Shown: positions 4,002 to 54,408, counted from the first letter of the stretch. The stretch: DNA of 64,000 nucleotides from Guillardia theta CCMP2712 (GCF_000315625.1 NW_005434558.1:84002-148001); one strand, 5' to 3'. Numbers and translations: made by a program. The notes: generated from the letters alone by a model not told the origin.

Positions 4002-4706
4002 CCTCCATCACATCAGCTGCTGATCTGCCAGCATGTGAGAAGCGACCGAGATGGTTTGCGGATAAGAGAAGCGAGAAAGGGAGGGAGAAGACTTCGACTC
4101 TCTTCATCTCTTCATCATAAACTTGTTTCTTCTCCCTTTCATGTCTTCCTCTGTGCCATGCCTTATCTTCGCTACCTGCCCCCCCCCCTTCCTCCCTCTC
4201 TTTCCCCTCCCTCCCTCCTCCCTCTTGTTAAAATTCCCCTCACGACCGGTCGCAATAATAAAAATAGGGGCAGGCAAACGCGATGCCACCACTGCCCGTC
4301 TCCTGCTCCCCTGATGTCCGTCTCTCCCCCCCCCCCCTCCCTCCTCTCTCACTCCTACCTGGTCCTGCCTGCTGCAAGCAGCTGGGGTTGGAGATGCGGG
4401 TCTAGGATCGACAACTTTTGACTTTCAAGACTCGGGGTCAGGCATGAGCTAGGCTACTCAGCTAGCTACTCCTCTGCGCTGCATTTCAAGACAGGTAGCA
4501 GCAGGAAATCTCGTCCAGTCAAGAAACCGATCATGAGAACGGGAATGAGAAGGAGGAGGAGGAGGCGGAGGCGGAGGCAGAGGAGGAGGAGGAGGAGGAG
4601 GCTCTACAACGTCCATGATTCGGACATTGTCAAGGATCAGGATCAAACAAGGCCATCCACGTAAGTGAAGATTTCAATGAATAGGTTCGAGCGCCTGCTG
4701 CTCCAA

Positions 4707-5922
4707 TCACCAGTCGTCGTCGATGCGCCGCCGTTGGAACGTGACCTGGAGGTCAGCAGCCCGTCAGCGGCCCCGGAGGGAGGAGACAGCGACGGGAGGA
4801 AGCAGACGACTGACCTTAGTCTCCTTCTCCGTCTGCTCGTTGATGGATTCCAGCATCTCTATGAGCTGGGCCTCGTCGATCTGCCCCCCGATCGCCCCGC
4901 GCTGAGCGTTCATGATGAGCATGTCCTCCACCTTCCTCGCCTTGTCCTTCTTTACCATCGCGATGTTCGACACTGACAGTTCGAGTTCAGCACAGGCACC
5001 TTCACCTTCCACCAGCTACTCACGTCGCTCGCGCGCCTGCGGGGAAAGGATCGCTTTCAGGATCTGAGTCCTCTGATCCTCCGCAGCCTTCTGACGCTCC
5101 TGGGCAGAACAGTCAGCACAAGAGCAAGAGACTGCAAAACATTCGATGAGCAAACATCACGAGCAAACACCACAACATATCTCATCACATTACATCCCAT
5201 CATCCCATCAGCTCATCACATACAACTAGACATCACAGCCAGTCACAATTCAAACTACTTCTTCCACACCTGCTGTGCCTTCTGCTGCTCAGGGTCCATC
5301 TGCTGATATCCTCCTGCCACAGTCTCAGCATGTTGCCAACAAGCTCCGAGGATCTCCGACCGTATCCTCCCACTCCTCCCATCCCGGCTTGACCGCCGCC
5401 CTTGCCCCGAAGCTGTGCCATCCTCCTCGCCCTGATAGCGGCGAGTTCGGGATCTGTCAGAGACTTCAGCGGGGATCAAGGGATGCTTGCGAGCATGTCG
5501 TTCAATCTGATCGTCAGCTGCAGGCTGAGCTATGACGGTTGGAATCAAAACCCATCTCGATATCAATCATTTGCAAAATTCTCTTGTTCGCAGCAGAGCA
5601 TATCAACTCTCGCCCGTTATGAACATCGATCTTAGTCCACCACTCATTGAATGTTCTTAGAACAGTAGAGCTCAAATATTCTCATAAAAATCCTCTTTCC
5701 TACATCATCACAACCATTTCCTCCCCCTTCCCAAGCTCGCGTCTTTCTTGCCTGTCCCCTTTCTTGCTCCTTCTTGCTCCTCCTGCTCCTGCTCCTGCCC
5801 CTGCTCCTGCTCCTGCCCCTGCCCCTGCCCCTGCTCCTGCCTCTCGCTCCTCGCTCCAGCCCCTGCTCCTTCTGCTCCTGCTCCTGCTCCTGCTCATACT
5901 CCTGCTCCAGCCCCTGCTCCTT

Positions 5923-28249: not shown

Positions 28250-31200
28250 CAGTGGCTTGATGTACCTTGAAACACATCAGCTGGATGGCAATACTTTTTC
28301 CTCGCTCACTTGTCGTCTAATCTCCTCCATATGCGATGCAGTTTGCTTCTGTGCGCTTTTGAACTCTCTTGACTCATCAACTGCACAAGAACCAAGAAAA
28401 AGAAGGAGGAGAAGGGGGCAGGATGAGAAAGAAGGAGCAGAAGGGGGAGAAAGAAGAAGGAAAGAGGAGGAGGGAGGAGGAGGGAGGAAGAGACGCGCTG
28501 TGAGAGGGCTTGAGAAACAAGGAAATCATTCTTATCAACATGATGCGCAAGGTCCAAATGTTCCCTTTCAATGCCTGCAATGTTCTGTTTCAGCTTCATC
28601 GCGTATCTCTCACTCCCATTTCAATCCTCATCCTCCTCCTCCTCCTCCTCCTCCTCCTCCTCCTCCTCATTATCATGTGTGTTATGCAATCACCTGAGTT
28701 TGGAGTCTCATGTTGATACGTGATGAGCGAGTCGATACGGAGAAAGATCGAGCCTCTGCATACGTTCGCATCCCATCACTCGCAACTCGACAAGTTGAGG
28801 TGCAACCTTGTGATTGGCTGAAGGAAGGAAGCGACGAGTCCGCACGGCACCAGTCGCAGGAAGCATGGCGGGAGGAGGAAGTGAGATCGCGTTGCACATG
28901 ACACGCATGATAGAGGAACTCACGTTCGCCCCGTGATCCTGACTGACGAAGGTTGGAATCTTGAGCAGTCGCAGCACAGGAGCTGTTAGCTGTGAGCACA
29001 GGGAGGTCAATCAAGGCAAGAAGGTAGCACGGGAGGAATGTTTCTGACCTGGCCGAGGAACACGTTGGTGAAGAGGATAATAACGACGACGCAAGGGATG
29101 ATGTAAGTTCGGTTGGGGCCTTGGAAGGTGAGGGAGAGGGCGAAGGCAATGGCTCCCCTATTGAACATGACGATGGTCAGCTGATGGATGGAGAATGAGG
29201 GAAAGTGCAAGAGAGAAGCCAGAAGAACATTTTGTTGTTGCTGTTGCTTTTGCTGTTGTTATGAATGGTGGTGGTGGTGGTGGTGGTGGTAATATGATAA
29301 CAATGATGATTTTTTTTTTACCTCAACCCAGCAAACCAGATCATCAACATGTTCTTGAAGCTGATACGAGTTTCTTGTGCGTGACCTGACCTGTGAAGCA
29401 ATGCATAGAATAAGTTGTCTTCTTTTCGGGTTTGGAGTTTGCTCCTGCTCCTGCTCCTGTTACTGCTCCTGCTCCTGCTTCTGCTCCTGCTCCTGCTCCT
29501 GCTCCTGCACCCTTTGCTCTCGTTCCCGCCCTTGCTCTTCCTTCCTTTCTCTTCCGCTCCTCACCTCTTGCAAGTATTGAGCAACCAGCACAAGAAAAAC
29601 ACGTTCGCTCCTGCAACACGTCAATCTCCTCACCTCTCCTCGTCAAGACCGGCACGCAATGACTCACTTGATATCAAACAGAGCACGATTGACCAGCCCA
29701 CGAAGCACCAGTCCAAGACAAACTTCGGTTCTCCCTATGAAATCAAATGGCGTTAGTATCAGTAAACTTTCCTCCTCCTGACTCGCCAACAACCACTCTT
29801 AGCCTTCCTCCCGTTGCTCTCTTCTCCTACCTGCTTGTTGCTGTTGCAGTGAGGTAAGATGGTCGGCAGGATGTTGAAACCAAAGAAGATGAAAACAGAT
29901 GTCTCACTGCGCCGATGAGCTTTCATCATGATCTCCTCAACAGTCATTTTTGCATGCTGTCAACCTCAAGTACGCTAATGTTCGAGCGACGTTGTGAGCT
30001 GTCTCTTTGCCGTCATGGCTGTCGTTGCAAGAATGCAATGCATTCAATTTCACCAACAGAAGTGAAAGTGTTGTATGATTGACAAGATAGAGGGTAGACG
30101 ATGAGAAGTACAATCGTATCATTCATGAGAGAACGAGTAGATGAAAGAAGAGGTAAATGAGGGAACAAGGTGATAAGAAAGAGTTGTGAATGGTCACACC
30201 TGAGGTTGTATTTGGTGTAATGTGACATTATCACTCCGCAGAAGAAGATGCTCATGAGTCCAGAAACCTGACAACACACGTCAGAGGAGCGACGAGAGGA
30301 CAATCAGGACCTTGATAGCGTCGGCAAAGATGAAACTGAGATATGCGACGCTCAACACGATTGTGACCTGCCAGTTGGAGGGGGAGCAATTAACGCAGCG
30401 GTAGAAACAACATTGAAAGCAACACATTGGATGTACACAACTAATGTTCGGAATAAGATTGACAAACACCTCGAGTAGAGATGGATCTTTAGTACAGACG
30501 TCTCAAACACAAAATCTGGCATAAACAAGGAGGCGATCATATCCAGAACAAACTTCATGCTCATCCAAAACAATCTTCCCACTTAAAAACATCTCACTCA
30601 CACTGGTATGTTCACGTCCTTACCTCACTGTGCGGAGCTCCATCCTTGATGACCCTCTTTGTGATAAATGCCGACAGCATCCCAAACAAGGCCCCGACCA
30701 CCACAGATCCGATAGACTGAAGGCTGGCGGTCAACGAGACTGACACTGAAGCTAGCAAGCGACAGAGCAGGGAGTCTCACAACGATAAGGAAGTTGACGA
30801 AAGCGTCCAAGGCCTGCCAATGGCGGGATAAGCTCAAGACAACTGAAATGATCCCTGGCTGACATCCTCGTCTCTAGAGCTACAGAATCGTGCAATGACT
30901 CTTTCCTTCTGTGACAAATTCTCCCACCCACCCTCCCACCCTCTTCCTTTCCTGCTCCTCACCTCCCATTCATTCTCTCTCTCTCTCTCTCTCTCTNNNN
31001 NNNNNNNNNNNNNNNNNNNNNNNNNNNNNNNNNNNNNNNNNNNNNNNNNNNNNNNNNNNNNNNNNNNNNNNNNNNNNNNNNNNNNNNNNNNNNNNNNNNN
31101 NNNNNNNNNNNNNNNNNNNNNNNNNNNNNNNNNNNNNNNNNNNNNNNNNNNNNNNNNNNNNNNNNNNNNNNNNNNNNNNNNNNNNNNNNNNNNNNNNNNN

Positions 31201-33215
31201 NNNNNNNNNNNNNNNNNNNNNNNNNNNNNNNNNNNNNNNNNNNNNNNNNNNNNNNNNNNNNNNNNNNNNNNNNNNNNNNNNNNNNNNNNNNNNNNNNNNN
31301 NNNNNNNNNNNNNNNNNNNNNNNNNNNNNNNNNNNNNNNNNNNNNNNNNNNNNNNNNNNNNNNNNNNNNNNNNNNNNNNNNNNNNNNNNNNNNNNNNNNN
31401 NNNNNNNNNNNNNNNNNNNNNNNNNNNNNNNNNNNNNNNNNNNNNNNNNNNNNNNNNNNNNNNNNNNNNNNNNNNNNNNNNNNNNNNNNNNNNNNNNNNN
31501 NNNNNNNNNNNNNNNNNNNNNNNNNNNNNNNNNNNNNNNNNNNNNNNNNNNNNNNNNNNNNNNNNNNNNNNNNNNNNNNNNNNNNNNNNNNNNNNNNNNN
31601 NNNNNNNNNNNNNNNNNNNNNNNNNNNNNNNNNNNNNNNNNNNNNNNNNNNNNNNNNNNNNNNNNNNNNNNNNNNNNNNNNNNNNNNNNNNNNNNNNNNN
31701 NNNNNNNNNNNNNNNNNNNNNNNNNNNNNNNNNNNNNNNNNNNNNNNNNNNNNNNNNNNNNNNNNNNNNNNNNNNNNNNNNNNNNNNNNNNNNNNNNNNN
31801 NNNNNNNNNNNNNNNNNNNNNNNNNNNNNNNNNNNNNNNNNNNNNNNNNNNNNNNNNTCTCTCTCTCTCTCTCACTAGCTTGCCAGCCAGCCAGCCTTCT
31901 CCCCCAACCTGTCTCTGTCTCCGTTTCTATTTCTGTCTAAAAGTCTTCCAACCCTCGCGGTTTCCTTGGACCTCACTGCCTCTGTCTCTCGTCTCTCAAC
32001 TCACCTGCGAGGAGGAGATTGAGATGTCATTCCCGTCCGGCAGGCTCAAAAACCTTCATCGCACATCAGCACACTCGGCCGAAATGACAGGCGGCAAGGC
32101 ACACACGTCTGAAACAGCACCACCGCTACAGCATCGTTGATCACGCTCTCCCCGAACACAATGGAGTACAACTGTGTATCGACGTCTAGAGATCCCATCA
32201 CTGCCAGCGTGCCTGTCGACACGAGTCACTCTGGAGCCTTAGGGAAACATGTAAGAATCTCAACCGATCGGGTCAGTAGCGCTCATCATACTACCAAACA
32301 ACAACCCTTCCTTAGGGTTCTGGCCGTTGATGCCCTTGATGTAGTTTTCCTTGGCCAAGAAAAACAGCCCTGCGTTGATGCGCAGACCTTAACAAGAGCA
32401 CGCGAATAAATCGAGCAACAAACCCAATCCAAGGATGAAGGTAGAAAGCAGAGTCCCACACACAGCCAGCGTGCAGATCGCAGCGAAGTTCTTGAAAAAG
32501 TCTTTCTGATTGAGAGCGAAACTGCTTCAATGTCATCGCAGAAGACACAGGGGAGCAAGATCCCACCCTGCTTCAAAGAGGATGGGAGGCACGAGGAATA
32601 AGAAGAAAACAGTGTCGAAGGACCCTGAAGGTAATCCCGATCAACAGCCCCGCACGTTCAAGTGGAAGCTTGCACCATGTATGGACGAGTAGTTCTCTCC
32701 ACACAGAGGAAGTGAGGCCAGAAATCCCAGGGAGATTGCGATCAGAGAATCATTCGTGTACCTGCACTCCCGTTATCAAACAATCCATCCACCCTCTCTC
32801 CTCACCAGTAGTCATTGTTCAATTTCTGGTTAGGAGACAATTTTCGTGCATCGCATCACAATCAGCACAGAGATTTGATGCACAGGACCATGGGTTCAGC
32901 ACCTGCGCCAGGTTCCCCAGGATCGTTGATAGGAGCACAAGGGAAGTAAATCCAGCCGTCACCTGCCAACCATTCTCATGACCTCCTCGTGCCATCCCCA
33001 TCGCGGACCTTGCTCGTGTTGATATCAATCACATCGTCACCTCCAGGGGCTGGTGTTGCTCCGGGCGTTTGTTGCAGCCAATCAAGCATAGGTTGTGCAG
33101 AGAGAGACAAAAAGACAGTGAAGTTTCTCAAGGTACTACCCTGCACCCTGCGTGCCCATGTGTCAGGGATTACGACTATTTGCTGGTCTGGAGGCGGGAG
33201 CCAAGGCATTCGCAA
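28250..33215 (-). CDS. Na+/H+ exchanger, CPA1 (NHX/NHE) family (many introns; boundaries approximate)
   Basis: Exons FTSLVLLSTILGNL, FFLFLVPPILFEAG, YSIVFGESVIND, SGLMSIFFCGVIMSHYTKYNL, RGAIAFALSL...VVVIILFTNVFLGQ. Confidence 0.88.
30997..31857. other. assembly gap (N run) at an intronic (CT)n repeat
   Basis: N run flanked by ctctct. Confidence 0.99.
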
Positions 33216-41799: not shown

Positions 41800-43808
41800 A
41801 TCATCCATATCAGGCTTTTAGCCCTTCCTCCTCCATCCCTTCCCTCATCTGACCTCATACCCATTCGGTGCTCAGTGCTGCTTGACCCTGCCCTCGTCCT
41901 CTGCCGTCGACTATCGAGCCTGCCACAGGCAAGCAGCAAGAGGACAACCAGCTCGCCTGCGCTGAGAATGACCGGTGCTGCAAGCACGGCGAGGCCAGCG
42001 GATGACGTGTGGGGTGGCAGGAGGAGGCGACATGGCTTCGGGGGCGCCGAGGAGCAAGACATTCGAGAGACCATGTACGGAACAAGGACGGGGGGGGGAA
42101 GGGGGGAGGGTGGTGGGAGGGCAAGCGAGGGCGCTGACGGCGTGTGACAGTGATCGTCGGGGTGCTGGGATATCTGCAGCTGCTTCCCAGTAGGATGAGC
42201 GATGGAGCATGCGAGGGGGCTGACTGTGACGGCGTAACGCACCAGGAGCGACCGGACTGCGAGTGCTCAACGACAAGACGAGCGCGGGAAAAGCCGCGGG
42301 CGAGCAGGAGGGCGACCTGTCGGCTGCTCTGCGCCGGAGCATGACGACGCTGTACGGGAGGCATCTGTCAGGTATGGCGATAGGCTTGAGGGTGGTTGGG
42401 GATCCGGGCGGGCTGACAGAGGAGCAGAGGACGGGACCCAGCTCGACTACGGGGGGATGGCGGCGAGCGAAGAGTACGCGGGGTACAAGGCGCTGGCGGA
42501 AGGGCTGAGGGAGGTAGACACAAGGAGCATGGGAGAAGAGGAGCGGGTAGCCTTCTTCATCAACGTGTACAACTGCCTTGTGATCGACGCGATCATCTCT
42601 CTCGGGGAGCCCAAGGACCTGCTGTCGCGGCTGAGGATGTATGCGGAAGCCGCTTACAACATCGGGGGGGCGAACTTCTCCCTCAACGACATCGAGAACG
42701 GGGTGCTGAGAGGGAACCAGGTGATCGCCCATGCTGCATGCTTGGTGTACCGTGGTGCTGGAGGCGGCTGGGGGCTTGTGAGTCAGGGCGCCGTTGCGGG
42801 CTTGGTGTGGGAGTTGGCGTGGGAGAGGTCTAAGTCGTGCGCTCCTACCAGAGTCCGCCGACCATCAACCCCTTCGCTCAGGTGGGGCAGGGCAGTGGGG
42901 GAGGAAAGCGCGAGGCTGACTGGGAGGATGCAGAAGCCTTTCGGGGAGGGAGACGCCCGTGCGGGCATTGCGTGCAAGAAGCCAGGTAGAGAGAGTGCGA
43001 GGAGGGTCGAGGAGGGGGTACTAGGGGTACACGGAGGGAGCAAGAGGCAGGCAAAGAGGAGGGGTGGGGTGGGGGTGTCGGGGGCATGGCTGCTTTGGGA
43101 GAGGAGGTGACGGCTGTCACAACAGACCCCCGGATCCACTTCGCGCTCAACTGCGGGGCTAGAGGATGCCCGCCGATCAGGTTCTACCGAGGCGAAGAGC
43201 TGGACGCGATGCTGGACAAGGCGGCGAGGTCTTTCTGCAAGTCGATAGAGGTGAGCCGGGCTCCATGGCGAGGCAGGGGAGACGAGACTGGGAGGAGGCC
43301 TGAGGGGGAGCGGGAGAGGTGGAGATCAGGGAAGCGAGGGGTGATGACAGCTGACTGGGGGGATGCGATGGCAGGTGGACCAAGACAAGGGAGTGGTGTA
43401 CATGTCTCAGATATTCAAATGGTGCCTCGAGCCTGTCGGGGACTGGTACCAACTCGTTGCTTGGCAGGTATGAGAACGACTTCCAGTCAGACTCGACCGA
43501 CAAGCCTCCCGTTTCCACCTTGAGGTGTTTCTTGATACCAGCTGCCTGGCCTGGAAGCGCAAGCTGACGGCATCTGCTCTACTGTGACCGCTTAGGTTTG
43601 TCGAGAAGTACCTGGACGAGGATAAGAAGGATGCTCTCTCTCGCTTCCTCGAGTCTGGCAAGGTGGAGTATGCTTTCCTTCTGTTGTACTGTTCATCTCT
43701 GGCGCTGCTTCTACTTTGATCTCATCAGATCGTGCTCTGTGTGACATCCTGCAAAGGTTCCGGAGTTGAAATTTCAACCGTATGACTGGGGCCTTAACTC
43801 GAAGTGAA
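41800..43808 (+). CDS. DUF547-domain protein, copy 1 (spliced; start uncertain)
   Basis: ERVAFFINVYNCLVIDAII, YNIGG.NFSLNDIENGVLRGN, DPRIHFALNCGARGCPPIRFY, MSQIFKWY..DF; last exon ...QPYDWGLNSK*. Confidence 0.88.
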
Positions 43809-43841: not shown

Positions 43842-45065
43842 TTACTGCATCCACTCCTTCACAACCTTGACGACTTCTGTCGGTTTCGTCAAGTGCGCGT
43901 AGTGAGCCCCTCCCGCCATCGTCGCTACTGTCAACCCCTTCGCCTGGCGGTAACGACACAAGAGCATGTACATGGAGACTATCCTGGCGCTGAAAGAAGC
44001 CTTCTCTGTGAAATTGATCCGTTTAGGGGCCCCCCGTATGACGGAGAAGATTCGTGTGACCCAGTATGCCAGAAAGACAAGGGTGCACCATCGCCTCGAG
44101 AAGGGCTGAAGTCCGAAAAAGAAGGCCTGCTGGAACAGACCATCACGAGCAATGAGCACCAGGTGAGGGCAGCGGATCGACTTGAGAATCTCCAGCACAA
44201 GAGCCTCCGAGCAGCGCAACCTCGGCACCATGATCTGAGGGTCTGCGGTCCACACGTAGCCCTTCCCATCCTCCAAGGCCCTGGCTCCTCTCGACACCAG
44301 CACCATGGCATCTTTGGGTTCCATCACCCCGATCATGTTCTGCTTCGCCCTGCGCTGTGCGCATGCCTCCAAGCTCTCGTAGGGAGTCCACTGTCGGGAT
44401 CCTATCTTGGAGGAGCACATGGTTTTGAGAGCATCAAGCTGCTTCCTGCCTCCTTCCTGACTGTACCACCCGAACGACTCAAAGCCAACCACTTGAACAA
44501 CTCGCTCAGGAGCAGCAGCAGCGATGGCCTGGGCGACGCAGCCACCGAGAGAATGGCCCATGAGCGAGAAGTTCGACCATCCGAGGAGCTCAGCCACTTG
44601 CAGGACATCCGCTACATGGTCGATGTCATGGTAGAAGCTGCGATGGTCCGATAGTCCATGGCCAGCACAATCCAGGCAGACGATGGAAGATGCTCCAGCA
44701 GACAAGAGCATCGGAGCTATTCGGTCGAACGATGCTGCGTTGTCAGCCCAACCATGGAGAGCGATCCAGAGCTTGCTGGGGTCCGTCATCTTCGTGTCTC
44801 CCCACACTCTTGCTGCAACATTGAAATCCTTCCTGAGCTTGAAGAACTTCTCCTCGGCTGCCACCATCCTTGGGGCCAGCCCATTCCTACCCCTCGCACG
44901 GGATGCCTTGACACAGGGGTATCCATGTGGCTGTGAGGATGGCGTGCACCGGAGGTTGATGTTGAAGCAGTCAGCTTGGAATGCAGACAAGAGGACGGGG
45001 GGGAGGAGAAGGAAGAGGGGGAGGGGGAGACATCGACTGTCCCGCATCTCCTTCGCTAGCGTCAC
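43842..45065 (-). CDS. alpha/beta hydrolase (serine hydrolase-like) with predicted N-terminal targeting peptide
   Basis: IALHGWADNAASF, LDCAGHGLSDH, nucleophile elbow GHSLGG, C-terminal GGAHYAHL; intronless ORF. Confidence 0.9.
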   Translation of the reverse strand: MTLAKEMRDSRCLPLPLFLLLPPVLLSAFQADCFNINLRCTPSSQPHGYPCVKASRARGRNGLAPRMVAAEEKFFKLRKDFNVAARVWGDTKMTDPSKLWIALHGWADNAASFDRIAPMLLSAGASSIVCLDCAGHGLSDHRSFYHDIDHVADVLQVAELLGWSNFSLMGHSLGGCVAQAIAAAAPERVVQVVGFESFGWYSQEGGRKQLDALKTMCSSKIGSRQWTPYESLEACAQRRAKQNMIGVMEPKDAMVLVSRGARALEDGKGYVWTADPQIMVPRLRCSEALVLEILKSIRCPHLVLIARDGLFQQAFFFGLQPFSRRWCTLVFLAYWVTRIFSVIRGAPKRINFTEKASFSARIVSMYMLLCRYRQAKGLTVATMAGGAHYAHLTKPTEVVKVVKEWMQ

Positions 45066-45658
45066 TGGTGACTGCTGACCTTACCACGAGGCCATGGACC
45101 GTCTGACATTGTTGGGCCCGCCTCACTGGGAGGACAAGGAGACGGCGGCGTGGCCAGTGGGCCGCCGAGAGGGCCGCCGCCGGGCGGCGGGCCCTCAGCC
45201 GCGCCGTTCAAGTTCAACCGAATGACCCCGGCCACCAGGCGACACCCACCCCCGGGCCTGTCGTCGTCAGTCCGATCGGCCGGGTCACGTCACACGGCGA
45301 CCGTACGGCAGAACTGGAAGTCCGGCGCGGCCCACTGACTCATCAGCCGCATGACTCAGGCTCGCCCGGAGTGCAGTGCCCGCCGATAAAGAAGAGGCCC
45401 GATCGGACCGTACGGTCACTGCGGCACCGGGCACCGTGTGGCCACTGGCACTGACACTAATCAGAAAGCGCAAAGGTTTCACTCTGAGGCGGTTTGGACA
45501 AGTCGTTAATGATCCCTCTTGCCCTACCCCACCAACCCGCGCCTTTCCACCTCCCCCCACCTCCCGTCCTCTACTACCCCCCACTACATCCACCCGACCC
45601 CTCTACCCCTCCCCCCACCTCACCCTCGTTCTGTCCACAGACAGCCCCGCCGACGACC

Positions 45659-48600
45659 ATGTTCTCGCGATGTTGGCATTGCAAGGCAAGCGAGGAGCGA
45701 GGAGGCGCCTCTGTTGTTGTGCTTGTTGCATCGGATCTTCTGACTCGGTACTCATCAGATTCACATGGTTCCTGGCACCGGAGATCGCTCGAAATGCGTA
45801 CGATTGATTGATTCATCTTTGTTCGACACGTAACTCCTCTTTTTCCAAATGCGTCAAACCTGTTTTCACTCAAGGCGGTAAGCAAAGTTGTATCATTCTC
45901 AATAGAATATGCAAGGCAAAAATAATGTTGTGATCTTATGACTTGGGTTCGGAACGCCTTGTATGGATTGTTGATGGTCCTTCAGAGGGTGAGTAATGCG
46001 GAAGAGTACGATTGTAAAGGATGGGACTGACGGATATTGTTTTCAACTTTGATCATCGTTTGACGGGGCTGAGCGGGTGGATGAGGACAGCCGGTAAGAG
46101 AGGGAGAGAGAAGAGAGGAAAGAATAGGGAGTGACTCAGAGCATTTTCAACTTCGAAATTGACTTTGTCTCCTACGGTCTGGGGTGATGGGGCATGAGCA
46201 GCGGGTAAGAGAGAAGGGAGGGAGAGAAACGAGGATAGGGATTGACGGAGGGCGTTTGCAACTTGTATCGGAAATACTCTCTGGGAAAATTTTGGGATGT
46301 GGCGCTGGCATGAGCAGAAGGTAAGGAGCGAGAGGAAGAGACGGCGGGCTGACATTCGATGTTTGCAACTTCGATTGGGGATGGCCGGATGATGGTGGGG
46401 GACACGGTGCTTGACGAGGACAGCTGGTAAGTAACGGGCAGAAGAAGAGGGAGAGGGTGGAAGAGATGGAAATTGACGATGCGTGTTTGCAAATTTCATT
46501 GGGGATGGCTACATGATTGTTGGGCTTATGGTGGCAGTGGGTAAGTAATAAGAAGAGAAGAGATGGAGAGAAACATCGAAGCTGACGGATGATGTTTGCA
46601 ACTTTGATCGGAAATTGGTGGATGACTGCGGGTGGGGGGACGGGGGCTCTTGTGGGGAAAGCTTGTAAGTGACAGAGGTGGGGGAAAGGAACTGATGTTG
46701 TACGTTTGCCACTTCGATCGGGTACGGCTCCGGGGATGTGGGGGGACATGCGGCGCCGAAATAGTGGGTAAGTGACCAAGAGAGAGGAGGTAGGAAGTGA
46801 CTTTTGATGTTGCAACTCCCGACGGGGGCGCATGGGACGTTTTGTTGATCGATTGTTCTAGAGTGTAAGTAGAGAGAGAGATGAAGCAGAGAGGGGAGGA
46901 TGGGGGCTGACAGAGGGTGTTTGCAACTCTATTTCTCAATCATCGCATGACTTGTATAGCTGGTGAGTGACGAGGGGAGGAGGAGGAGGAGGAGGAGGAG
47001 GAGGAGAGAGAAACTGAAAGTACTGAACGTGGTTGCTTACAACCTTGGTTGGTGGTGATCTGGCCACTGATGGGGGGATCTGGGCCGCTGACGACGATAG
47101 ATGGTATGTAATCAGAGGATGGGAGAGAAAGCAATACACGAGGGCTGATGATGGATAAACTATCGGTGATGGCTTCGGTGCTTTGCGGGAATATGGGGCT
47201 GACGCGGACAGAGAGTAAGTGACGACGAGAGGAGGGGGCGGGAGAGAAGGATCTCTGCTGACGATGGATCTTTGCAACTTGAACCTGGGACGCTTTGGGG
47301 TGCGGTCAACGCTCTCATGGGAGTAGTGGGTGAGTCATGAGAGGGGAGGGGTTGCGAAACCGAAGGACAGGATCTGACGGTGGGTCTGTGCAACTTGGAT
47401 TGTGAATGGGCGAACGGGGGGCTGGAGGAGCTAGCTGGTGAGTGAGGAGGGAGTGCGAGGGAGAAGGAATAGGGGCTGACCGAGGGCCGTTGTTGGATCG
47501 GGGACGGCGGGGATGTTTGATGTGGACACGGTGACCTGCGAGGACAGTGGGTGAGTGACAAAGAGAGAGGAGAGTTGTGGGAACGAATATAGTCTGATGA
47601 TGGTTGGTTTCAACTCGGACTCGACTTGGAATTCTTGGATTCTCGTTTTCGATCCTTTAGGATGTAAGTTTCAAGGAGAGAGGAGGGAGGAGAAGATACT
47701 GACAAAGGAACTTTGCTTCTTGGATCGGGTGTTGGCTCGGGTTTGGGTTTGTCTTCTCAGCGGGTAAGTATCTAGGGGAGAGGATGGAAACGACATGGAC
47801 AAGGGCTGACCGATGGCCTTTGCATCTTGGATCGGGTATGGCCGGGGGCCTGGATCTAATGAGGATAGCTTGTAAGTAAGGAGGGAGAGGATAAAGAAGA
47901 GAAAAGATGTTGACTAATGCGATACCTTTTCAACTTGGATCTGGCGCACGATATACCAAACATCAATCATCTTTGATAGTTGGTGAGTGATGACAAGAGA
48001 AGAGGAGGAGGGAAGAGACGAAGGGAGCAAAGGAAGAACGAAAGGATTGGGACTGACTGGAGATTTCGCATTACAACTTGATTCGGTAAACCATGGGACT
48101 CTTGACAAGTGCAGTGGGTAAGATAAAACAACAGAGAGAGAGTGGAGGATGATAGGAGCTGACTGTGGGTCTATGCTATCTTGATGCGGCACTCATTACC
48201 TGGTCTCTACATCTGTTTGTATAGAGTGTGAGTATGGAGGAGAGACAAGGGTGGGATCGAGCAGATTAGCAAGCTGACGCTGCGTCTATGCAACTTCGAT
48301 CGGGGATCTGTCTCGTCGGCTGCTATGCGGGGCGGTGGGATCATCGGACCTTGGGCTTGCGGGCACAGCTGGTTAGTAACCAGGATAGCGGAGGAGTGGC
48401 TAGGCTAGGGGCTGACGGTGGATGGTTTGCAACTTCCATCGGCTGGGCTATGTGGAACACATATGGCATATGGGGACAGTGGGTAAGTGTCAAGGAGGGA
48501 GACACGGGGGGGGGGGGAAGGGAATAGGGAGCTGACGAAGGGTGTTTGAAACTTGGATCGGATCGGGGACGGCTGGGGCCATGGGGACTGACGAGGACAG

Positions 48601-51600
48601 CCTGTAAGTAGGGAGGAGGGAGGAGGGAGGAGGGAGGAGGGAGGAGGGAGGAGGATAGCGTGCTGACGGAGGATGTTTGCTTCTTGGATCGGGGACGCGG
48701 GGGCTTACGTGGACAGTGGGTGAGTGCGGAGCAGAGAGAGGGGGAGAGAGGAAGGATGGCGAGCTGACTGAGGACGTTTGAAACTTGGATCGGGGACTGG
48801 CGCTTGTGGTTTGGACACGGAACATGGGGCTATGAGGACAGCTTGTGAGTATAGAGGGGAGAGGATGTAGGAGGGCAGGGGCTGACGATGGTGTTTGCAA
48901 CTTGGATCGGGGGCGGTCGCACGGCAATGTTGGGGGCCGCTTGAGGATAGCTTGTGAGTATTGAGGAGAGAAGAAGGGAGCGAGGAGGGAAGGGACTGAC
49001 AGAGGGTGTTTGCATCATGGATCTGGGCCGACTTGTCATGGGGCTAACGGTGGTAGCTCGTAAGTGTGAGCACGATTCAAGGAAGAAAGGGGCTGACGAC
49101 GTATGTTTGCGACTTGTATCGGGGATGGGCGCGTCGGGGGACATGGGACTGACAGGGACAGCTTGTAAGTAACGAGGAGGGAGAAAGGGAGTCAGGAGAG
49201 TGCAAGCTGACAATGGATGTTTACACACTTTGATTGTGGACGAATCGATGATGGGTTGGATGTTTCGAATACGAGGACAGCTGGTACGTAAGGAGGAGAG
49301 GAGAAAGGAGAGAGAAGGAATGGCGCTTATTTTGGCGTTTCCAACTTGGGTCGGGGACTGACGCGTGGGCGGGGGACATTGGATGATAACATGGACAGTT
49401 GGTAAGTAAAGGAGAGGCGAGGAGACGAGACGAGACGAGACGAGACGAGACGAGACGAGAGGAGAGGAGAGGATAATGTAGGCTGACCATGACTGTTGGA
49501 TTTTGGATCGGGAACGACTGGATCACGGGCTGGGAATGGGCTACGAGAATAGCTGGTATGCAAGGAGGAGAGAGATGGAATAAGCTAAGCTAGCGGGAGC
49601 TGACGGAGGGTTCGCAATTTGCACGATCGGAACTATGGGGACGGGGACAATGCTTGATGGCGCGGACAGCTGGTGAGTAAAGGAGAGAGTAGAGAGGAAA
49701 GAAGAAGAGAGGATTTCTAATGATTTGATATTTACATCTTGGATCGGGAAATGCCGGCGTTGCGGGGAACTTGGGGTTTACGAGGATAGCCCAATGTAAG
49801 TATCGAGAAAGGAAAGTGGGAGAGGCAACGATAGGTTGACTGTTGGTGTTGCCAATTTGATTCGGGGCGGCTGGGGTGATGGAAACATGGACCGACATGG
49901 TTAGCTGGTATGTGATGAGGGGAGAGGGCGGAGAAAGAGAAGGATAGGAGCTTACATGAAATCTTCATAACTCGGCTTGGGATGGCACTTGGGTCGATAA
50001 ATTTGCATTGGGCTGACGAGGACAGCGGGTAAGTGGCGAGGAGAGAAGAGGCCTCAGATGGAAGGAAATTGACTGAGGGTTTTTGTTCAAATGGTACGGA
50101 ATCTTCGCAGTGCTGTGTAAGTTGTTCGTGTCTTGATATTCTGTCACTGTGATATTGATTTTTTGGGGGTTCGCTACCATGATGACAGCAAGTAAGTTCG
50201 TCGGCTGATCTTTGGCTATTCGTCTCCTTAGATTGCCTTTCAGTGCTCCAAGTGGAATTGGTTGCCGTTACAACTCCAGGTCTGTTGCCATACCGGTCTG
50301 CTCTATCAGCTGATGGATCCTGTTGGTAGCGAGGGTGCGACCAGTGTGAAGAACGGCAAAGTCAACAAATACCAAGGGCGAGGCAGGGAGTCGAGATTCG
50401 AAGCCAGCAGGGAACAAGTCAGAGCCAGAATGCAGCTGGTAAAAAATTGGATTGGAGAGAGAAAAAACTGTTGGAAGACAGGCAGAAATCAATCGACAGG
50501 GAAAGGGAGCATAAAAGGATAAACCAGGAAGAGGAAAGGCGGCGGCGGCAGCAACAGCCTTGGAAGCAGCAGCCGCCACAACGGCAGCCGCCGCCGCCGC
50601 CGCAAACACCGCCGCCGCCAACACCGCCAACACCGCCAATACCGCCGCTACAACAGCAGCAGGAGCAGCTGTGGTTGCAGCGGCTACTTAGTCAGCTGGT
50701 GCCGGAGCCGAGATTGGACGAGCGAAGGGATCACAACAACGTCATGCAGCAGGTCATCACTAACATCTCTAGAGCCTCGAAGTATCTTGACATTCCTTGT
50801 TTCAGCCCGATGCCATTCCATGGGTAGACTTTCGAGTCTTCAACATTGTGAAGTATTTCAACTCTGGTTCTTTCAAGACTGTGTTCCATGGTCAATGGAA
50901 GAAGTCTTGTGGATACACTGATGTTGCCATCCTTCAAATCAGAAACAGTAGAGCTGCTGGAAGAAGAGAGGAGTTCGAGCGGGAGGTGCAGACATTCAAG
51001 ACTCTGGGCCTTCATTCCAACCTCCTTCGACTCCTCGCCATCACCACCGAGCCGAAATCTGGTGACTTCTGCATGGTAACAGAGTTTGCTTCCATGGGTT
51101 CGTTGGACACACATTTGTCGGAACTTGCCGAAAGGAAGACGACGATCAGTCCGTTGGTGCAGCTGCAAGTGGCCATGCAGATTTGTGAAGGGATGGTACA
51201 GCTTGCCCTGTATGAGGTGGTGCATCGAGACCTCGCAGCAAGGAACGTGCTTGTCTTCAGTCTAGTCCCGCAGGATCACCTCAGGGTGAACGTCAAGATA
51301 GCCGACTATGGGCTGTCGATCATGGCCTCCCGCGGGTATGGAGAAGGAGCTGGGGGCGTGAGCACGGCAGGATCGACAATTCGACCAGTCCGATGGTTGG
51401 CACCAGAATGTATTCAGCGACGACGTTACTCGGAGAAGAGCGATGTGTGGGCGTTCGGCGTTACCCTATGGGAGGTGTGGACATACGCTAAAGTTCCGTT
51501 CTACAACACTTCAGATGAAGAAGTGGAACAGAAGGTGCTCACGGGCTCGCGACTTTCTCAGCCCCAGTCATGCCCTGATCAAGTATACAGCATCATGCAG

Positions 51601-51924
51601 GAATGCTGGAAGGAGAAGCAGTCAGACCGGCCAGAATTCAAAGATTTGAAGTTGAAGCTACAAGGGCAATATGATGAAGCCCTTAGAAGTCAAGCAATAG
51701 AGAGCGTCATGAAAGATAGCAACAGATGCAAGAGACCGCGAGAGGACGACGGAGCTGGAGAAGACGACGACAACATGTGCGTCATCTGCAATGAAAGAGA
51801 GCGCAGGTGGGCCTTCCTGCCCTGCGGTCACAGGTGCCTCTGCGATCTGTGCAATACCGCAGCGGCTACGAGGCTTTGTCCCATGTGTCGCGCGCCCCCT
51901 AGCAGCATGCACAGGATCTACTGA
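45659..51924 (+). CDS. micro-exon gene: Cys-rich/hydrophobic N-terminus built from 39 micro-exons, Q/P-rich linker, tyrosine-kinase-type domain, C-terminal RING-HC
   Basis: Model: 45659-45685 (MFSRCWHCK; GC donor), 45759-45797, 39 micro-exons 45875-50191, 50232-50279, 50330-50752, 50806-51924. All junctions are phase 0 and the frame stays open throughout. Confidence 0.7.
45875..50191 (+). repeat. tandem array of ~115-bp degenerate intron + micro-exon units
   Basis: Typical unit: GT(A/G)AGT - purine tract - GCTGAC - tttgcaacttggatcggg - G-rich - (ggac)AG|NNN|GT. Confidence 0.92.
50806..51924 (+). CDS. protein kinase exon with tyrosine-kinase signatures plus C3HC4 RING
   Basis: HRDLAARN, KIADYGLS, RPVRWLAPE, SDVWAFGVTLWE, CW...RP.F; RING CVIC...FLPCGHRCLCDLC.......CPMCR. 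Confidence 0.95.
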   Translation, partial: PDAIPWVDFRVFNIVKYFNSGSFKTVFHGQWKKSCGYTDVAILQIRNSRAAGRREEFEREVQTFKTLGLHSNLLRLLAITTEPKSGDFCMVTEFASMGSLDTHLSELAERKTTISPLVQLQVAMQICEGMVQLALYEVVHRDLAARNVLVFSLVPQDHLRVNVKIADYGLSIMASRGYGEGAGGVSTAGSTIRPVRWLAPECIQRRRYSEKSDVWAFGVTLWEVWTYAKVPFYNTSDEEVEQKVLTGSRLSQPQSCPDQVYSIMQECWKEKQSDRPEFKDLKLKLQGQYDEALRSQAIESVMKDSNRCKRPREDDGAGEDDDNMCVICNERERRWAFLPCGHRCLCDLCNTAAATRLCPMCRAPPSSMHRIY

Positions 51925-52700: not shown

Positions 52701-54408
52701 GACCTGTCGGCTGCTCTGCGCCGGAGCATGACGACGCTGTACGGGAGGCATCTGTCAGGTATGGCGATAGGCTTGAGGGTGGTTGGGGATCCGGGCGGCT
52801 GACAGAGGAGCAGAGGACGGGACCCAGCTCGACTACGGGGGGATGGCGGCGAGCGAAGAGTACGCGGGGTACAAGGCGCTGGCAGAAGGGCTGAGGGAGG
52901 TAGACACAAGGAGCATGGGAGAAGAGGAGCGGGTAGCCTTCTTCATCAACGTGTACAACTGCCTTGTGATCGACGCGATCATCTCTCTCGGGAAGCCCAA
53001 GGACCTGCTGTCGCGGCTGAGGATGTACGCGGAAGCCGCTTACAATATCGGGGGGGCGACCTTCTCCCTCAACGACATCGAGAACGGGGTGCTGAGAGGG
53101 AACCAGGTGATCGCCCATGCTGCATGCTTGGTGTACCGTGGTGCTGGAGGCGGCTGGGGGCTTGTGAGTCAGGGCGTCGTTGCGGGCTTGGTGTGGGAGT
53201 TGGTGTGGGAGAGGTCTAAGTCGTGCGCTCCTACCAGAGTCCGCCGACCATCAACCCCTTCGCTCAGGTGGGGCAGGGCAGTGGGGGAGGAAAGCGCGAG
53301 GCTGACTGGGAGGATGCAGAAGCCTTTCGGGGAGGGAGACGCCCGTGCGGGCATTGCGTGCAAGAAGCCAGGTAGAGAGAGTGCGAGGAGGGTCGAGGAG
53401 GGGGTACTAGGGGTACACGGAGGGAGCAAGAGGCAGGCAAAGAGGAGGGGTGGGGTGGTAGTGTCGGGGGCATGGCTGCTTTGGGAGAGGAGGTGATGGC
53501 TGTCACAACAGACCCCCGGATCCACTTCGCGCTCAACTGCGGGGCTAGAGGATGCCCGCCGATCAGGTTCTACCGAGGCGAAGAGCTGGACGCGATGCTG
53601 GACAAGGCGGCGAGGTCTTTCTGCAGGTCGATAGAGGTGAGCCGGGCTCCATGGCGAGGCAGGGGAGACGAGACTGGGAGGAGGCCTGAGGGGGAGCGGG
53701 AGAGGTGGAGATCAGGGAAGCGAGGGGTGATGACAGCTGACTGGGGGGATGCGATGGCAGGTGGACCAAGACAAGGGAGTGGTGTACATGTCTCAGATAT
53801 TCGAATGGTGCCTCGAGCCTGTCTGGGACTGGTACCAACTCGTTGCTTGGCAGGTATGAGAACGACTTCCAGTCAGACTCGACCGACAAGCCTCTCGTCT
53901 CAGCTATGAGCTGCAACGATGAACTAGACAAGAAAGCTTCTTGTGTCTGCGCGTGTGGATGTTTGGTTTCACGCCGCAAACGACCTCCTATCTCCACCTT
54001 GAGGTGTTTCTTGATACCAGCTGCCTGGCCTGGAAGCGCAAGCTGACGGCATCTGCTCTACTGTGACCGCTTAGGTTTGTGAAGAAGTACCTGGACGAGG
54101 ATAAGAAGGATGCTCTCTCTCGCTTCCTCGAGTCTGGCAAGGTGGAGGATCCGAGTTTATGCTCGTCTTCTCAGTTAGTGGTAGCCTCAGGATACCGTGA
54201 CTAGTCCAATGCTGCTGCAGTGCCGCTGTGTGGCTCACGAAAGCTTCATCCCGGCCAGTGACTCACAGTCAGCGAGACTTGACGAGGCTTGTCGGCCGCT
54301 AGTCCTCATCGCCTGACTTGATGTTTGAGTTTCCAGCACAGTACTGACTTCTTGGCAGGAGCTCGAAGTTCGCTATCAACAGTATGACTGGGGTCTTAAC
54401 TCATCTTG
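52701..54408 (+). CDS. DUF547-domain protein, copy 2 (5'-truncated duplicate, possibly pseudogene)
   Basis: Near-identical to 42314-43670, including introns. It lacks the 5' part of copy 1 and has its own last exon ...VRYQQYDWGLNSS*. Confidence 0.8.

What the first reader, a model, noticed from the sequence alone, without database searches (positions are those of the whole stretch)
45875..50191. Array of 39 micro-exons, 37 of them a single codon (3 nt), feeding a kinase-RING gene
Seen in sequence: about every 115 bp there is AG|NNN|GT, mostly with strong GTAAGT/GTGAGT donors. Exon starts: gcg45875, agg45986, ccg46091, cgg46202, aag46318, ctg46424, tgg46538, ctt46662, tgg46765, agt46862, ctg46960, atg47101, aga47212, tgg47327, ctg47435, tgg47548, gat47661, cgg47761, ctt47869, ttg47980, tgg48115, agt48225, ctg48369, tgg48480, cct48601, tgg48717, ctt48842, ctt48951, ctc49057, ctt49162, ctg49281, ttg49399, ctg49553, ctg49670, cccaat49790, ctg49905, cgg50026, tgctgt50111, caa50189. 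All lengths are multiples of 3 (two are 6 nt) and none is a stop codon. Joined, they read ARPRKLWLWSLMRWLWDRLLWSLWPWLLLLLLLLPNLRCCQ. This continues in phase 0 through 50232-50279 and 50330-50752 into the kinase at 50806. Inference: about 4.3 kb of DNA encodes 41 residues almost one codon at a time. Any subset can be skipped without frameshift, giving a potential combinatorial splice-diversification system. It is conceptually like Schistosoma micro-exon genes, but at single-codon resolution and on a signalling kinase. ORF and gene predictors would miss it.
Basis: partly seen in the sequence, partly recalled or inferred. Interest (0 to 1): 0.97.

Follow-up and report, generated by a model that had tools for sequence, protein, structure and literature searches.

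The report
Thirty-nine single-codon exons, really spliced
A 4.3 kb run of about 38 look-alike introns separated by exons only one codon long is really spliced codon by codon into the mRNA of a kinase-RING gene. The same odd gene layout recurs at 20 or more other places in this alga's genome, where gene predictors missed it.

Summary
Window 45875-50191 holds 39 AG|NNN|GT junction pairs, 37 of 3 nt and 2 of 6 nt, spaced 78-154 bp apart.

The core inference is supported. RNA-derived contigs from three studies carry the codons joined in genomic order (ME1-8, ME10-23, ME23-30, ME31-39). The joined strings are absent from the genome DNA. With RNA-corrected flanks (next exon starts 50244, not 50232; an extra GC-AG intron 45686-45758), one ORF of 588 codons runs from ATG 45659 to the stop at 51924.

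The array is not unique. The pattern AG-NNN-GTAAGT repeated at about 100 bp occurs 162 times genome-wide, against 8 for the control and 2-4 for 2-, 4- or 6-nt spacers. Sampled arrays sit at the same position in paralogues, inside an N-terminal Cys-rich module of kinase-RING or Roc-COR-TIR proteins. By its paralogues the genome is Guillardia theta.

Each intron has a mid-intron CTGAC followed by about 60 nt strongly depleted of AG. That fits a distal branch point with first-YAG acceptor choice.

I saw only in-frame alternative acceptors and frequent retention of single introns. No paper describing this was found. First readers of this scan noted similar arrays elsewhere in this genome, unverified.

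The parts
45659..45685 (+). Exon 1: ATG..., encodes MFSRCWHCK (first CxxC knuckle)
   Evidence: The X3 contig joins 45685 to 45759 (listed as joint 45683->45757, which may lie up to 2 places further on). Paralogues have the same exon, M..C..C[QK], followed by GCAAG.
45686..45758 (+). GC-AG intron (73 nt)
   Evidence: Joint in X3 at depth 125.6. The sequence reads AAG|GCAAGC...ATCAG|ATT. A GC donor stands at the same place in paralogues.
45759..45797 (+). Exon 2: IHMVPGTGDRSKC
   Evidence: The loose end at 45798 in X3 runs straight into the micro-exon chain. It is homologous to paralogue exon 2, I.V....T.D..KC.
45798..45874 (+). Ordinary intron before the first micro-exon
   Evidence: Sequence GT...AAG. 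RNA joins 45797 to GCG.
45875..50191 (+). Array of 39 micro-exons (37 of 3 nt; CCCAAT at 49790 and TGCTGT at 50111 are 6 nt) separated by 38 introns of 72-151 nt. Micro-exon starts: 45875, 45986, 46091, 46202, 46318, 46424, 46538, 46662, 46765, 46862, 46960, 47101, 47212, 47327, 47435, 47548, 47661, 47761, 47869, 47980, 48115, 48225, 48369, 48480, 48601, 48717, 48842, 48951, 49057, 49162, 49281, 49399, 49553, 49670, 49790, 49905, 50026, 50111, 50189
   Evidence: Sites checked and unit alignment. RNA contigs join the codons in order (tables 5, 5c, 7). The joined strings are absent from genome DNA.
49153..49161 (+). Alternative or real acceptor of intron 29: the upstream CAG at 49153-49155 is used, adding GGACAG in frame
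   Evidence: X3 and X4 contigs resume at 49156 after ...CTT CTT CTC. This is the first YAG after the mid-intron CTGAC, and it lies 2 nt after the proximal CTGAC's A.
48372..48479 (+). Intron 23 (weak donor GTTAGT). In X1 and X3 the RNA resumes at about 48447 (+33 nt, in frame). X4 shows the 48371->48480 form
   Evidence: loose end at 48446; the letters between joint 48371 and 49156 start with TGG. The boundary as assembled is not AG, so a strain difference is suspected.
50117..50188 (+). Intron 38 (72 nt, not of the repeat type), often retained; retention gives an in-frame TGA
   Evidence: The X4 contig 50110-50191 is collinear and then spliced to 50244 at depth 31.7, against 5.8 for the fully spliced form. 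In X3 the corresponding depth is 955.
50244..50279 (+). Exon CSKWNWLPLQLQ. Together with TGCTGT|CAA it completes the CCxC motif
   Evidence: Joints 50191->50244 and 50279->50330 appear in X1, X3 and X4. Paralogues carry CC.C-x13/14-C..C in a single exon.
50330..50752 (+). Exon: CDQC knuckle, then a charged and Pro-rich linker; has no in-frame ATG until 50741
   Evidence: Joints, sequence, no Pfam domain.
50806..51924 (+). Exon: protein kinase (PK_Tyr_Ser-Thr) plus C3HC4 RING, then the stop
   Evidence: Pfam E=3e-68 and 3.5e-13. Joint 50752->50806 in all three runs. A protein fragment 100% identical to it spans that joint.

Best explanation
This is a genuine tandem array of about 38 U2-type spliceosomal introns, each about 100-150 nt, separated by exons one codon long. 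It lies inside the coding region of a kinase-RING gene of a cryptophyte alga. By its paralogues the genome is Guillardia theta CCMP2712.

Shown:
- Each intron is an independent splicing unit.
- The codons end up joined in genomic order in RNA.
- Units are removed in no fixed order, and single units are often retained.

Inferred:
- Recognition is by intron definition. It uses the strong GTRAGT donor, a branch point at the mid-intron CTGAC about 60 nt upstream of the acceptor, and an AG-free zone, so that the first YAG downstream is taken as acceptor.
- The long distance from branch point to acceptor keeps U2 assembly on one intron away from U1 binding on the next donor, which lies only 3 nt beyond the acceptor.
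- The array arose by tandem amplification of an 'intron + one codon' unit at an intron position conserved across a paralogous gene family. That position is inside the second Cys knuckle of an N-terminal Cys-rich module (C..C - x13 - C-A-[array]-CC.C - x13/14 - C..C).
- Only a 3 nt spacer survives because both inclusion and exclusion keep the frame.
- In this gene the codons are mostly CTG, CTT and TGG. They encode a Leu/Trp-rich segment that looks like a membrane span, placed between the knuckles and ahead of the kinase.
For: Sequence anatomy: 39 AG|NNN|GT sites, with units that align to one another.

RNA:
- Letters between joints: X3 46864->47761 = CTG ATG AGA TGG CTG TGG GAT; X1 47103->47761 = AGA TGG CTG TGG GAT; X3 48482->48951 = CCT TGG CTT; X4 48371->49156 = TGG CCT TGG CTT CTT CTC.
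- Loose ends: X3 after 45798 = CG AGG CCG CGG AAG CTG TGG CT; X1 and X3 after 49283 = TTG CTG CTG CCCAAT CTG CGG TGCTGT; X4 after 49555 = ...TGCTGT CAA TG.
- An X1 contig links 45798 to 48446 across the chain.
- Partly spliced contigs are mosaic. One has intron 11 retained, introns 12-17 spliced and introns 18-20 retained. Units therefore splice independently.

The joined strings are not in the genome DNA at up to 2 mismatches.

A single ORF of 588 codons results. Homology on both sides of the array fixes the frame.

AG-exclusion zone: in the window AG is 21 against 88 expected and YAG 2 against 40. In other arrays AG is 27 against 199.5 and YAG 10 against 111. Where a CAG does occur in the zone (intron 29), RNA uses it.

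Genome-wide, a 3 nt spacer gives 162 matches against 8 for the control, while 2, 4 and 6 nt spacers give 2, 4 and 3.

Paralogues with arrays at the same position carry Roc-COR-TIR.

The Kyte-Doolittle mean is 1.86 over LLWSLWPWLLLLLLLLPNL.
Against: - Runs X1, X3 and X4 are labelled RNA only by a guess, although their GT-AG joints show they derive from cDNA. The one raw RNA run (X16) gave 5 reads.
- Contig depth falls about 10- to 50-fold from the kinase exons to the 5' chain. Intron 38 is retained in most transcripts and brings a stop. The fully spliced full-length mRNA may therefore be a minority, and translation of the chain is not shown.
- No branch point was mapped. Many window units also carry a second CTRAC 9 nt before the acceptor.
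- The RNA differs from the assembly at micro-exon 21 (ATG rather than TGG). One chain, CCT TGG CTT CTT CTT CCG CTT CTG TGG AGT, cannot be derived from the assembled order.
- A profile of the main family's units does not significantly hit the window's units. Common origin therefore rests on gene structure, not on unit sequence.
- Simple tandem duplication does not by itself explain why intron units elsewhere are more alike than their flanking codons.
Confidence: 0.85

Rival explanations
1. Programmed combinatorial diversification. Subsets of the single-codon exons are skipped or chosen at random, so that one gene yields many N-terminal peptide variants, as proposed for Schistosoma micro-exon genes.
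For: - Every unit is symmetric, so any subset keeps the frame.
- In-frame alternative acceptors exist, +6 nt and +33 nt.
- The paralogues are immune-like Roc-COR-TIR proteins, and the encoded segment differs greatly between paralogues.
- Depth of chain contigs falls towards the 5' end, as would happen if many isoforms split the k-mers.
Against: - None of the 15 listed joints or 17 listed loose ends skips a micro-exon. All chains follow the genomic order.
- The depth decline is equally explained by partial splicing, because a 31-mer spans about 10 junctions.
- Contigs drop rare variants, so the test is weak in both directions.
Confidence: 0.12
2. A neutral by-product with little or no protein role. 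A minisatellite of intron units expanded inside a 5' intron. The spliceosome removes the units because they carry good signals, but most transcripts are non-productive, and the working protein is the kinase-RING made from a downstream start (ATG 50741).
For: - Intron 38 is retained in most transcripts and gives a TGA.
- 5' exon depth is 2-11% of kinase exon depth.
- A related database protein (P0002) starts just before the kinase domain.
- The Leu/Trp bias follows from the repeat consensus CAG|CTG|GT.
Against: - There are 153 open codons (50244-50752) with no in-frame ATG upstream of 50741, so a start in or before the array is needed.
- The CC.C...C..C motif, conserved in paralogues, is only formed when introns 38 and 39 are spliced.
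- Stop codons are rare among micro-exons genome-wide: 1 of 113 against about 5 expected.
- The strong AG-exclusion zone shows selection for accurate splicing.
Confidence: 0.2
3. A tandem-intron host locus for small RNAs, like SNORD115/116. The conserved core of each intron is the product, and the tiny exons are mere spacers.
For: - Intron cores are more conserved than the codons between them.
- Many family units carry TGATG...CTGA motifs that resemble C/D boxes.
- Tandem intron-hosted snoRNA arrays are known (PMC11608373, found).
Against: - No Rfam match reached significance.
- Folding energies equal those of shuffled sequence, mean z about 0.
- The window's units lack the C-box-like part.
- Spacers are strictly 3 nt and in frame with conserved coding exons on both sides.
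- The conserved CTGAC plus the AG-free zone is explained by splicing itself.
Confidence: 0.05
4. An introner-type mobile element that has inserted repeatedly, rather than local tandem amplification.
For: - Unit subtypes recur at different positions and loci with unrelated flanking codons. Low-information intron columns are 77-88% identical, against 28-37% for the flanking NNN.
- There are 20 or more loci.
Against: - Core-motif copies occur only inside arrays of one paralogous gene family, with no dispersed solo copies at up to 3 mismatches.
- The sampled arrays sit at the same gene position.
- Block duplications are visible within arrays.
- Positional homologues between the C23 and C184 arrays keep their codons.
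- No terminal inverted repeats or target duplications are evident in the unit consensus.
- No known insertion mechanism gives an exact 3 nt spacing.
Confidence: 0.07

Closest known systems
Isolated 3-nt micro-exons of animals and plants (e.g. cytohesin-1, Drosophila homothorax, MAP4K5; PMC6314551, PMC7392893, PMC8632122)
   Same: A 3 nt exon flanked by canonical GT-AG introns, included in frame, adds one residue.
   Different: Those are single exons flanked by long introns and often need special factors. Here up to 39 stand in a row, about 110 nt apart, and the introns are copies of one another.
Schistosoma micro-exon genes (MEGs); comparison from my own knowledge, not tested here
   Same: Runs of symmetric micro-exons whose lengths are multiples of 3, so any subset keeps the frame. 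Gene finders miss them.
   Different: MEG exons are 6-36 nt, their introns are unrelated and long, and the products are secreted. Here the exons are 3 nt, the introns are tandem copies, and the host genes encode intracellular-type signalling proteins. No sequence relationship is known. Skipping is not shown here.
Introners / introner-like elements (Micromonas, fungi; PMC4540971, PMC3609843)
   Same: Families of look-alike spliceosomal introns within one genome; introner-like elements are about 100-120 nt.
   Different: Introners are dispersed in unrelated genes, and introner-like elements have stable predicted structure. These units are confined to tandem arrays in one gene family and have no excess structure.
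Recursive splicing at zero-length exons (Drosophila Ubx-type ratchet points); from my own knowledge
   Same: An acceptor directly abuts the next donor, so removal must be stepwise.
   Different: There nothing remains in the mRNA. Here 3 nt remain from every step.
Distal branch point introns with an AG-exclusion zone; from my own knowledge of mammalian alternative exons
   Same: A long AG-free stretch lies between the branch point and the acceptor, and the first AG downstream is used.
   Different: Here it is a constitutive design feature of every unit of a repeat. Its likely role is to separate neighbouring spliceosomes. No branch point has been mapped.
SNORD115/116 tandem intron arrays (PMC11608373)
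   Same: Dozens of tandem, homologous introns separated by short exons.
   Different: Those exons are non-coding and tens to hundreds of nt long, and each intron yields a snoRNA. Here there is no snoRNA evidence and the exons are in-frame codons.

Membership tests
U2-type GT-AG spliceosomal introns | GT (or GC) donor and AG acceptor at the boundaries, with removal seen in RNA | tested here: met
   joints with GT..AG ends, and the codons are joined in contigs of three studies.
U2-type GT-AG spliceosomal introns | Branch-point motif upstream of the acceptor | tested here: inconclusive
   A CTRAY motif is present mid-intron in 23 of 27 window units and 85 of 92 other units, followed by an AG-free zone. 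No lariat was mapped.
Micro-exon genes (Schistosoma MEG type) | Tandem symmetric micro-exons (length a multiple of 3) forming a coding stretch | tested here: met
   37 of 3 nt and 2 of 6 nt, all in frame.
Micro-exon genes (Schistosoma MEG type) | Protein variation produced by skipping micro-exons | tested here: inconclusive
   One search lists no skipped form, but contigs drop rare variants.
Micro-exon genes (Schistosoma MEG type) | Secreted product with a signal peptide; flatworm lineage | not tested
   The host is an alga, and the products carry kinase-RING or Roc-COR-TIR domains. No signal-peptide prediction was run.
Introners / introner-like elements | Many near-identical copies dispersed as introns of unrelated genes | tested here: not met
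   all 43 core-motif matches lie in clusters on 13 contigs; the sampled arrays sit at one homologous gene position.
Introners / introner-like elements | Stable predicted secondary structure (fungal introner-like elements) | tested here: not met
   mean z = 0.00 (family units) and 0.18 (window units) against dinucleotide shuffles.
Recursive splicing (zero-length exons) | Acceptor and regenerated donor juxtaposed with nothing retained in the mRNA | tested here: not met
   3 nt per unit are retained.
Intronic box C/D snoRNA host arrays | Match to a snoRNA family, or boxed and structured RNA in each intron | tested here: not met
   no hit near the gathering score. Window units lack the C-box-like part. 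Small-RNA data were not examined.

The most novel reading that the evidence does not exclude
The arrays are a diversity device of an algal innate-immune-like receptor family (Roc-COR-TIR and kinase-RING proteins). A loop between two zinc knuckles is encoded one codon per exon. Two processes would then diversify it. Unequal recombination between the conserved introns would add, delete and shuffle residues between generations. Stochastic splicing (skipping, alternative first-YAG acceptors, detained introns) would vary or gate the product within a cell. The introns would be kept alike while the codons are free to diverge, which is the reverse of normal exon/intron conservation.
Probability: 0.12. 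Interest if true: 0.97.

Novelty: new variant of a known kind. Interest (0 to 1): 0.9.

Why it matters
Splicing theory holds that very short internal exons are hard to recognise and that a donor and an acceptor a few nucleotides apart clash sterically. Here nature offers dozens of consecutive 3 nt exons that are spliced, in a culturable alga with public RNA data.

It is a ready-made system for several questions:
- What is the minimum exon size?
- How do intron definition and the order of intron removal work?
- How do distal branch points and first-AG scanning work?
- How do tandem duplications create introns and coding sequence?

It also shows that a whole N-terminal module of a family of Roc-COR-TIR and kinase-RING signalling proteins is missing from the reference annotation. 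Standard spliced aligners and gene finders are blind to this architecture, so similar arrays may be hidden in other protist genomes.

Tried and rejected
- Rfam scans of the window array and five other arrays gave nothing near threshold.
- Folding of units showed no excess structure.
- Tandem Repeats Finder reported only small internal purine repeats and missed the roughly 112 bp period, because the units are too diverged.
- BLAST of four units against the genome found only the array itself.
- A profile HMM of the main family's units did not significantly match the window's units. I therefore do not claim unit-level sequence homology. The link rests on the homologous flanking exons and the shared architecture.
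- The raw RNA run X16 gave only 5 reads.
- A protein search for a full-length transcript-derived product returned only an N-terminally truncated fragment (P0001). Hanusia phi and annotated Guillardia models of the paralogues start downstream of the module.
- An exact-pattern scan of metagenome contigs for the family core found nothing.
The unit statistics therefore rest on 10 other loci.
- Eight literature searches found no description of this architecture. The genome paper itself is not held.
- A processed-copy (DNA) origin of the joined strings is rejected.
- An assembly artefact is unlikely. Probable DNA runs of 2011 hold 50-71% of the stretch's words.

Full report
**1.
Reading window 45600-51000 and checking each listed coordinate shows all 39 sites as [C/T/A]AG | NNN | GT. 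37 have 3 nt between acceptor and donor. Two have 6 nt: CCCAAT at 49790 and TGCTGT at 50111. Donors are mostly GTAAGT or GTGAGT, and spacing is 78-154 bp.

In the whole 64 kb window the motif YAG-NNN-GTRAG occurs 34 times on the plus strand, 29 of them inside this 4.3 kb stretch, and twice on the minus strand. The 38 intervening pieces align with one another as a degenerate tandem repeat. Each piece reads GTRAGT, a purine-rich stretch, GCTGAC, a core GTTTGCAACTTGGATCGGGGA, a G-rich stretch, often a second CTRAC, then YAG. The plus strand has a GC skew near +0.5 across the array. Tandem Repeats Finder missed the period because the units are only about 60-70% alike.

**2. RNA shows the codons joined one after another.**
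I laid contigs of three likely RNA runs from three studies (X1, X3, X4) and one raw RNA run (X16) on window 45100-51050. X16 gave only 5 reads. The three contig sets show the ordinary downstream joints 50279->50330 and 50752->50806, so they derive from spliced RNA.

Inside the array the aligner cannot place 3 nt exons. It reports them as letters between two anchors, or as loose ends, and these letters are exactly the predicted codons in genomic order:
- X3 46864->47761: CTG ATG AGA TGG CTG TGG GAT (micro-exons 11-17).
- X1 47103->47761: AGA TGG CTG TGG GAT.
- X3 48482->48951: CCT TGG CTT.
- X4 48371->49156: TGG CCT TGG CTT CTT CTC.
- X3 after 45798: CG AGG CCG CGG AAG CTG TGG CT (exon 2 joined to micro-exons 1-8).
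- X1 and X3 after 49283: TTG CTG CTG CCCAAT CTG CGG TGCTGT.
- X4 after 49555: CTG CCCAAT CTG CGG TGCTGT CAA TG (into the next exon).

An X1 contig bridges 45798 to 48446, and the X3 counterpart has 75 unplaced letters ending ...GAT CGG CTT TTG ATG AGT CT. Together this covers micro-exons 1-8, 10-23, 23-30 and 31-39. Two of the joined strings are absent from the 87 Mb assembly at up to 2 mismatches. They are therefore not copied from a processed DNA copy.

Partly spliced contigs are mosaics. One has intron 11 retained, introns 12-17 spliced and introns 18-20 retained. Another has intron 9 retained and introns 10-17 spliced. The units are therefore removed independently and in no fixed order.

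**3. Corrections and the gene model.**
- RNA places the exon after the array at 50244-50279, not 50232. It is still in frame.
- RNA reveals a GC-AG intron at 45686-45758 upstream.
- With these junctions, ATG 45659 opens a single ORF of 588 codons ending at 51924. It reads MFSRCWHCK | IHMVPGTGDRSKC | the 41 array-encoded residues | CSKWNWLPLQLQ | a 141-residue linker | kinase plus RING (Pfam PK_Tyr_Ser-Thr 3e-68, zf-C3HC4_3 3.5e-13).
- The stretch 50244-50752 is open for 153 codons with no in-frame ATG before 50741. A start in or before the array is therefore needed to translate it.
- The array-encoded part contains LLWSLWPWLLLLLLLLPNL, with a Kyte-Doolittle mean of 1.86, which is like a membrane span (the function is inferred).

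**4. Limits of the RNA evidence.**
- Contig depth falls from about 1150-1550 (kinase exons, X3) to 955 at the CAA|50244 joint, 341 at CGG|TGCTGT, 134 at CTG|CCCAAT, 36-53 mid-chain and 26-126 at exons 1-2.
- A 31-letter word in the chain spans about ten junctions, so incomplete splicing alone can cause much of this fall. Internal starts or many isoforms cannot be excluded.
- Intron 38 (50117-50188, not of the repeat type) is retained in most transcripts. In X4 its depth is 31.7 against 5.8 for the spliced form. Retention gives an in-frame TGA, so fully productive mRNA may be a minority.
- No listed joint skips a micro-exon. The variation seen is an upstream CAG acceptor in intron 29 (49153-49155, +6 nt, X3 and X4) and a +33 nt form of intron 23 (X1, X3), whose boundary is not AG in the assembly.
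- The RNA also reads ATG where the assembly has TGG at micro-exon 21.
- One chain, CCT TGG CTT CTT CTT CCG CTT CTG TGG AGT, cannot be derived from the assembled order. An allele, a collapsed repeat or a paralogue is likely. This remains unexplained.

**5. It is a genome-wide architecture, not a one-off.**
The pattern AGNNNGTAAGT-N{85,115}-AGNNNGTAAGT has 162 matches in the genome against 8 for the reversed control. The same pattern with a 2, 4 or 6 nt spacer has 2, 4 and 3 matches. Matches lie in arrays on at least 20 contigs, and four further contigs appear.

In the ten other loci I could read, chains of 4-13 consecutive 3 nt exons were parsed. Only 1 of 113 micro-exons there is a stop codon, against about 5 expected.

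Most of these arrays share a unit consensus: GTAAGT..ATGCGGTCAGGGAACGATTGGCTGACAT..TTTTGCAA..GCTCGGATGGA..GGATAG. A 29 nt core of it occurs 43 times, always in clusters, never alone, with a control count of 0. A profile of these units does not significantly hit the window's purine-rich units, so the window array is a diverged lineage.

**6. The arrays sit at one homologous position of a gene family.**
At six other loci (two further loci match one of these exons) the arrays are preceded by exon 1 (M..C..C[Q/K], followed by a GC donor) and exon 2 (I.[VI]....T.D..KC). The first micro-exon is GCG in most of them. In four of the loci the array is followed by an exon starting CC.C-x13/14-C..C. The window gene has the same parts. 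Its CCQC is split as TGCTGT|CAA|TGC, so the conserved motif is formed only after splicing.

The array therefore lies inside the second Cys knuckle of an N-terminal Cys-rich module. An earlier first-reader note (s1-431662) suggested this, and the paralogue comparison here supports it.

Downstream, the C184 paralogue encodes Roc, COR-A/B and TIR domains in one 1311-codon exon. The C92 paralogue is alike. Database hits name the paralogues as Guillardia theta CCMP2712 proteins. One of them lies on a contig of 322,415 bp, the length of C92, which identifies the genome. The annotated models start at or after the CC.C exon, so the module and its arrays are missing from the annotation.

**7. How the units are probably spliced.**
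Between the mid-intron CTRAY motif and the acceptor (median 59-64 nt), AG and especially YAG are strongly depleted:

| Set | AG seen | AG expected | YAG seen | YAG expected |
|---|---|---|---|---|
| Other arrays | 27 | 199.5 | 10 | 111 |
| Window array | 21 | 88 | 2 | 40 |

One of the two window YAGs is the CAG of intron 29, and RNA uses it. It lies 2 nt after the proximal CTGAC's A. At least there, the branch point must be the distal one.

Ordinary introns of this gene are 50-77 nt, with CTRAY about 15 nt before the acceptor. In the array units, CTGAC is followed after about 13 nt by TTTGCAA, which looks like an acceptor with its G lost. First-reader note s1-431730 made the same point.

My inference is that each unit is an ordinary intron whose acceptor moved about 55 nt downstream to the first YAG. 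The long AG-free spacer would let U2 assemble on one intron without colliding with U1 on the next donor, which is 3 nt beyond the acceptor. This part has not been shown experimentally.

**8. Origin.**
Block duplications are visible within arrays: identical two-unit blocks in C70 and diagonal similarity in C72. The window's codons are alike (CTG, CTT, TGG), as expected if intron plus codon were amplified together.

The other arrays show a puzzle. Unit pairs with 78-95% identical introns are 77-88% identical even at the least conserved intron columns. Their flanking codons are only 28-37% identical. Yet positional homologues between the C23 and C184 arrays keep their codons: CAT/GAT, CCG/CCG, TCG/TCG, GTT/GTG. 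Either sequence is exchanged between introns without the codons (intron-restricted gene conversion), or the codons diversify under selection after duplication. I cannot decide between these.

**9. Rivals.**
- A small-RNA host locus is unlikely. There is no Rfam match, no excess structure, a strict 3 nt in-frame spacing, and the window units lack the C-box-like part.
- A dispersed introner is unlikely, because copies occur only in arrays at one gene position.
- A neutral, largely non-productive array remains possible as to function.
- Combinatorial diversification remains possible but has no direct support.

**10. Novelty.**
Single 3 nt micro-exons, micro-exon genes, introner families, recursive splicing and tandem snoRNA-host introns are all known. 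I found no report of tandem arrays of look-alike introns separated by single-codon exons, nor anything of the kind for cryptophytes, in eight full-text searches. The genome paper is not in the library. First readers of this scan noted similar arrays on other pieces of this genome (s1-431592, s1-431721, s1-431709). Those notes are unverified and are not independent evidence.

Noticed in passing
window 42457-43523 and 52783-53909: A DUF547 gene segment is present twice, nearly identical, on either side of the hydrolase and kinase-RING genes. This is a segmental duplication of about 1 kb or more, roughly 10 kb apart.
   Followed up: no
window 31001-32000: GC fraction is 0.076 in this 1 kb bin. 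It is most likely a run of N, that is a scaffold gap.
   Followed up: no
L013 (C184:47000-56000) 3650-4750; C72:414688-416600; C70:335300-338100 (minus strand): In the Roc-COR-TIR paralogues a normal 29-codon exon sits in the middle of the array. It encodes another CxxC...C knuckle (e.g. ATFQAGAEGKCKICSKLEKDHYGSSKFCY). In C70 this exon and its neighbouring units are duplicated.
   Followed up: partly
window 45662 (X3 loose end): One X3 contig carries the reverse complement of the exon 2 plus micro-exon 1-8 chain, joined to 45662. It is probably a strand-switch cDNA or assembly artefact.
   Followed up: no
G000 C75:36993-38272: Another array whose units have a G-rich 5' half (GGGATGGGATGATGGG...), like the window's purine-rich units and unlike the main family consensus.
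   Followed up: no
G000 C9:401141-401249 and 404666-404774; C207:65582-65743: Unrelated short tandem repeats containing GTAAGT (AGTTCCGTAAGTTC..., AGTCCAACGTAAGTGCATG...) turned up in the control patterns with 4 and 6 nt spacers.
   Followed up: no
window 43842-45065 (minus strand): A 407-codon ORF with an alpha/beta-hydrolase fold lies directly upstream of the kinase-RING gene and is divergently oriented to it.
   Followed up: no
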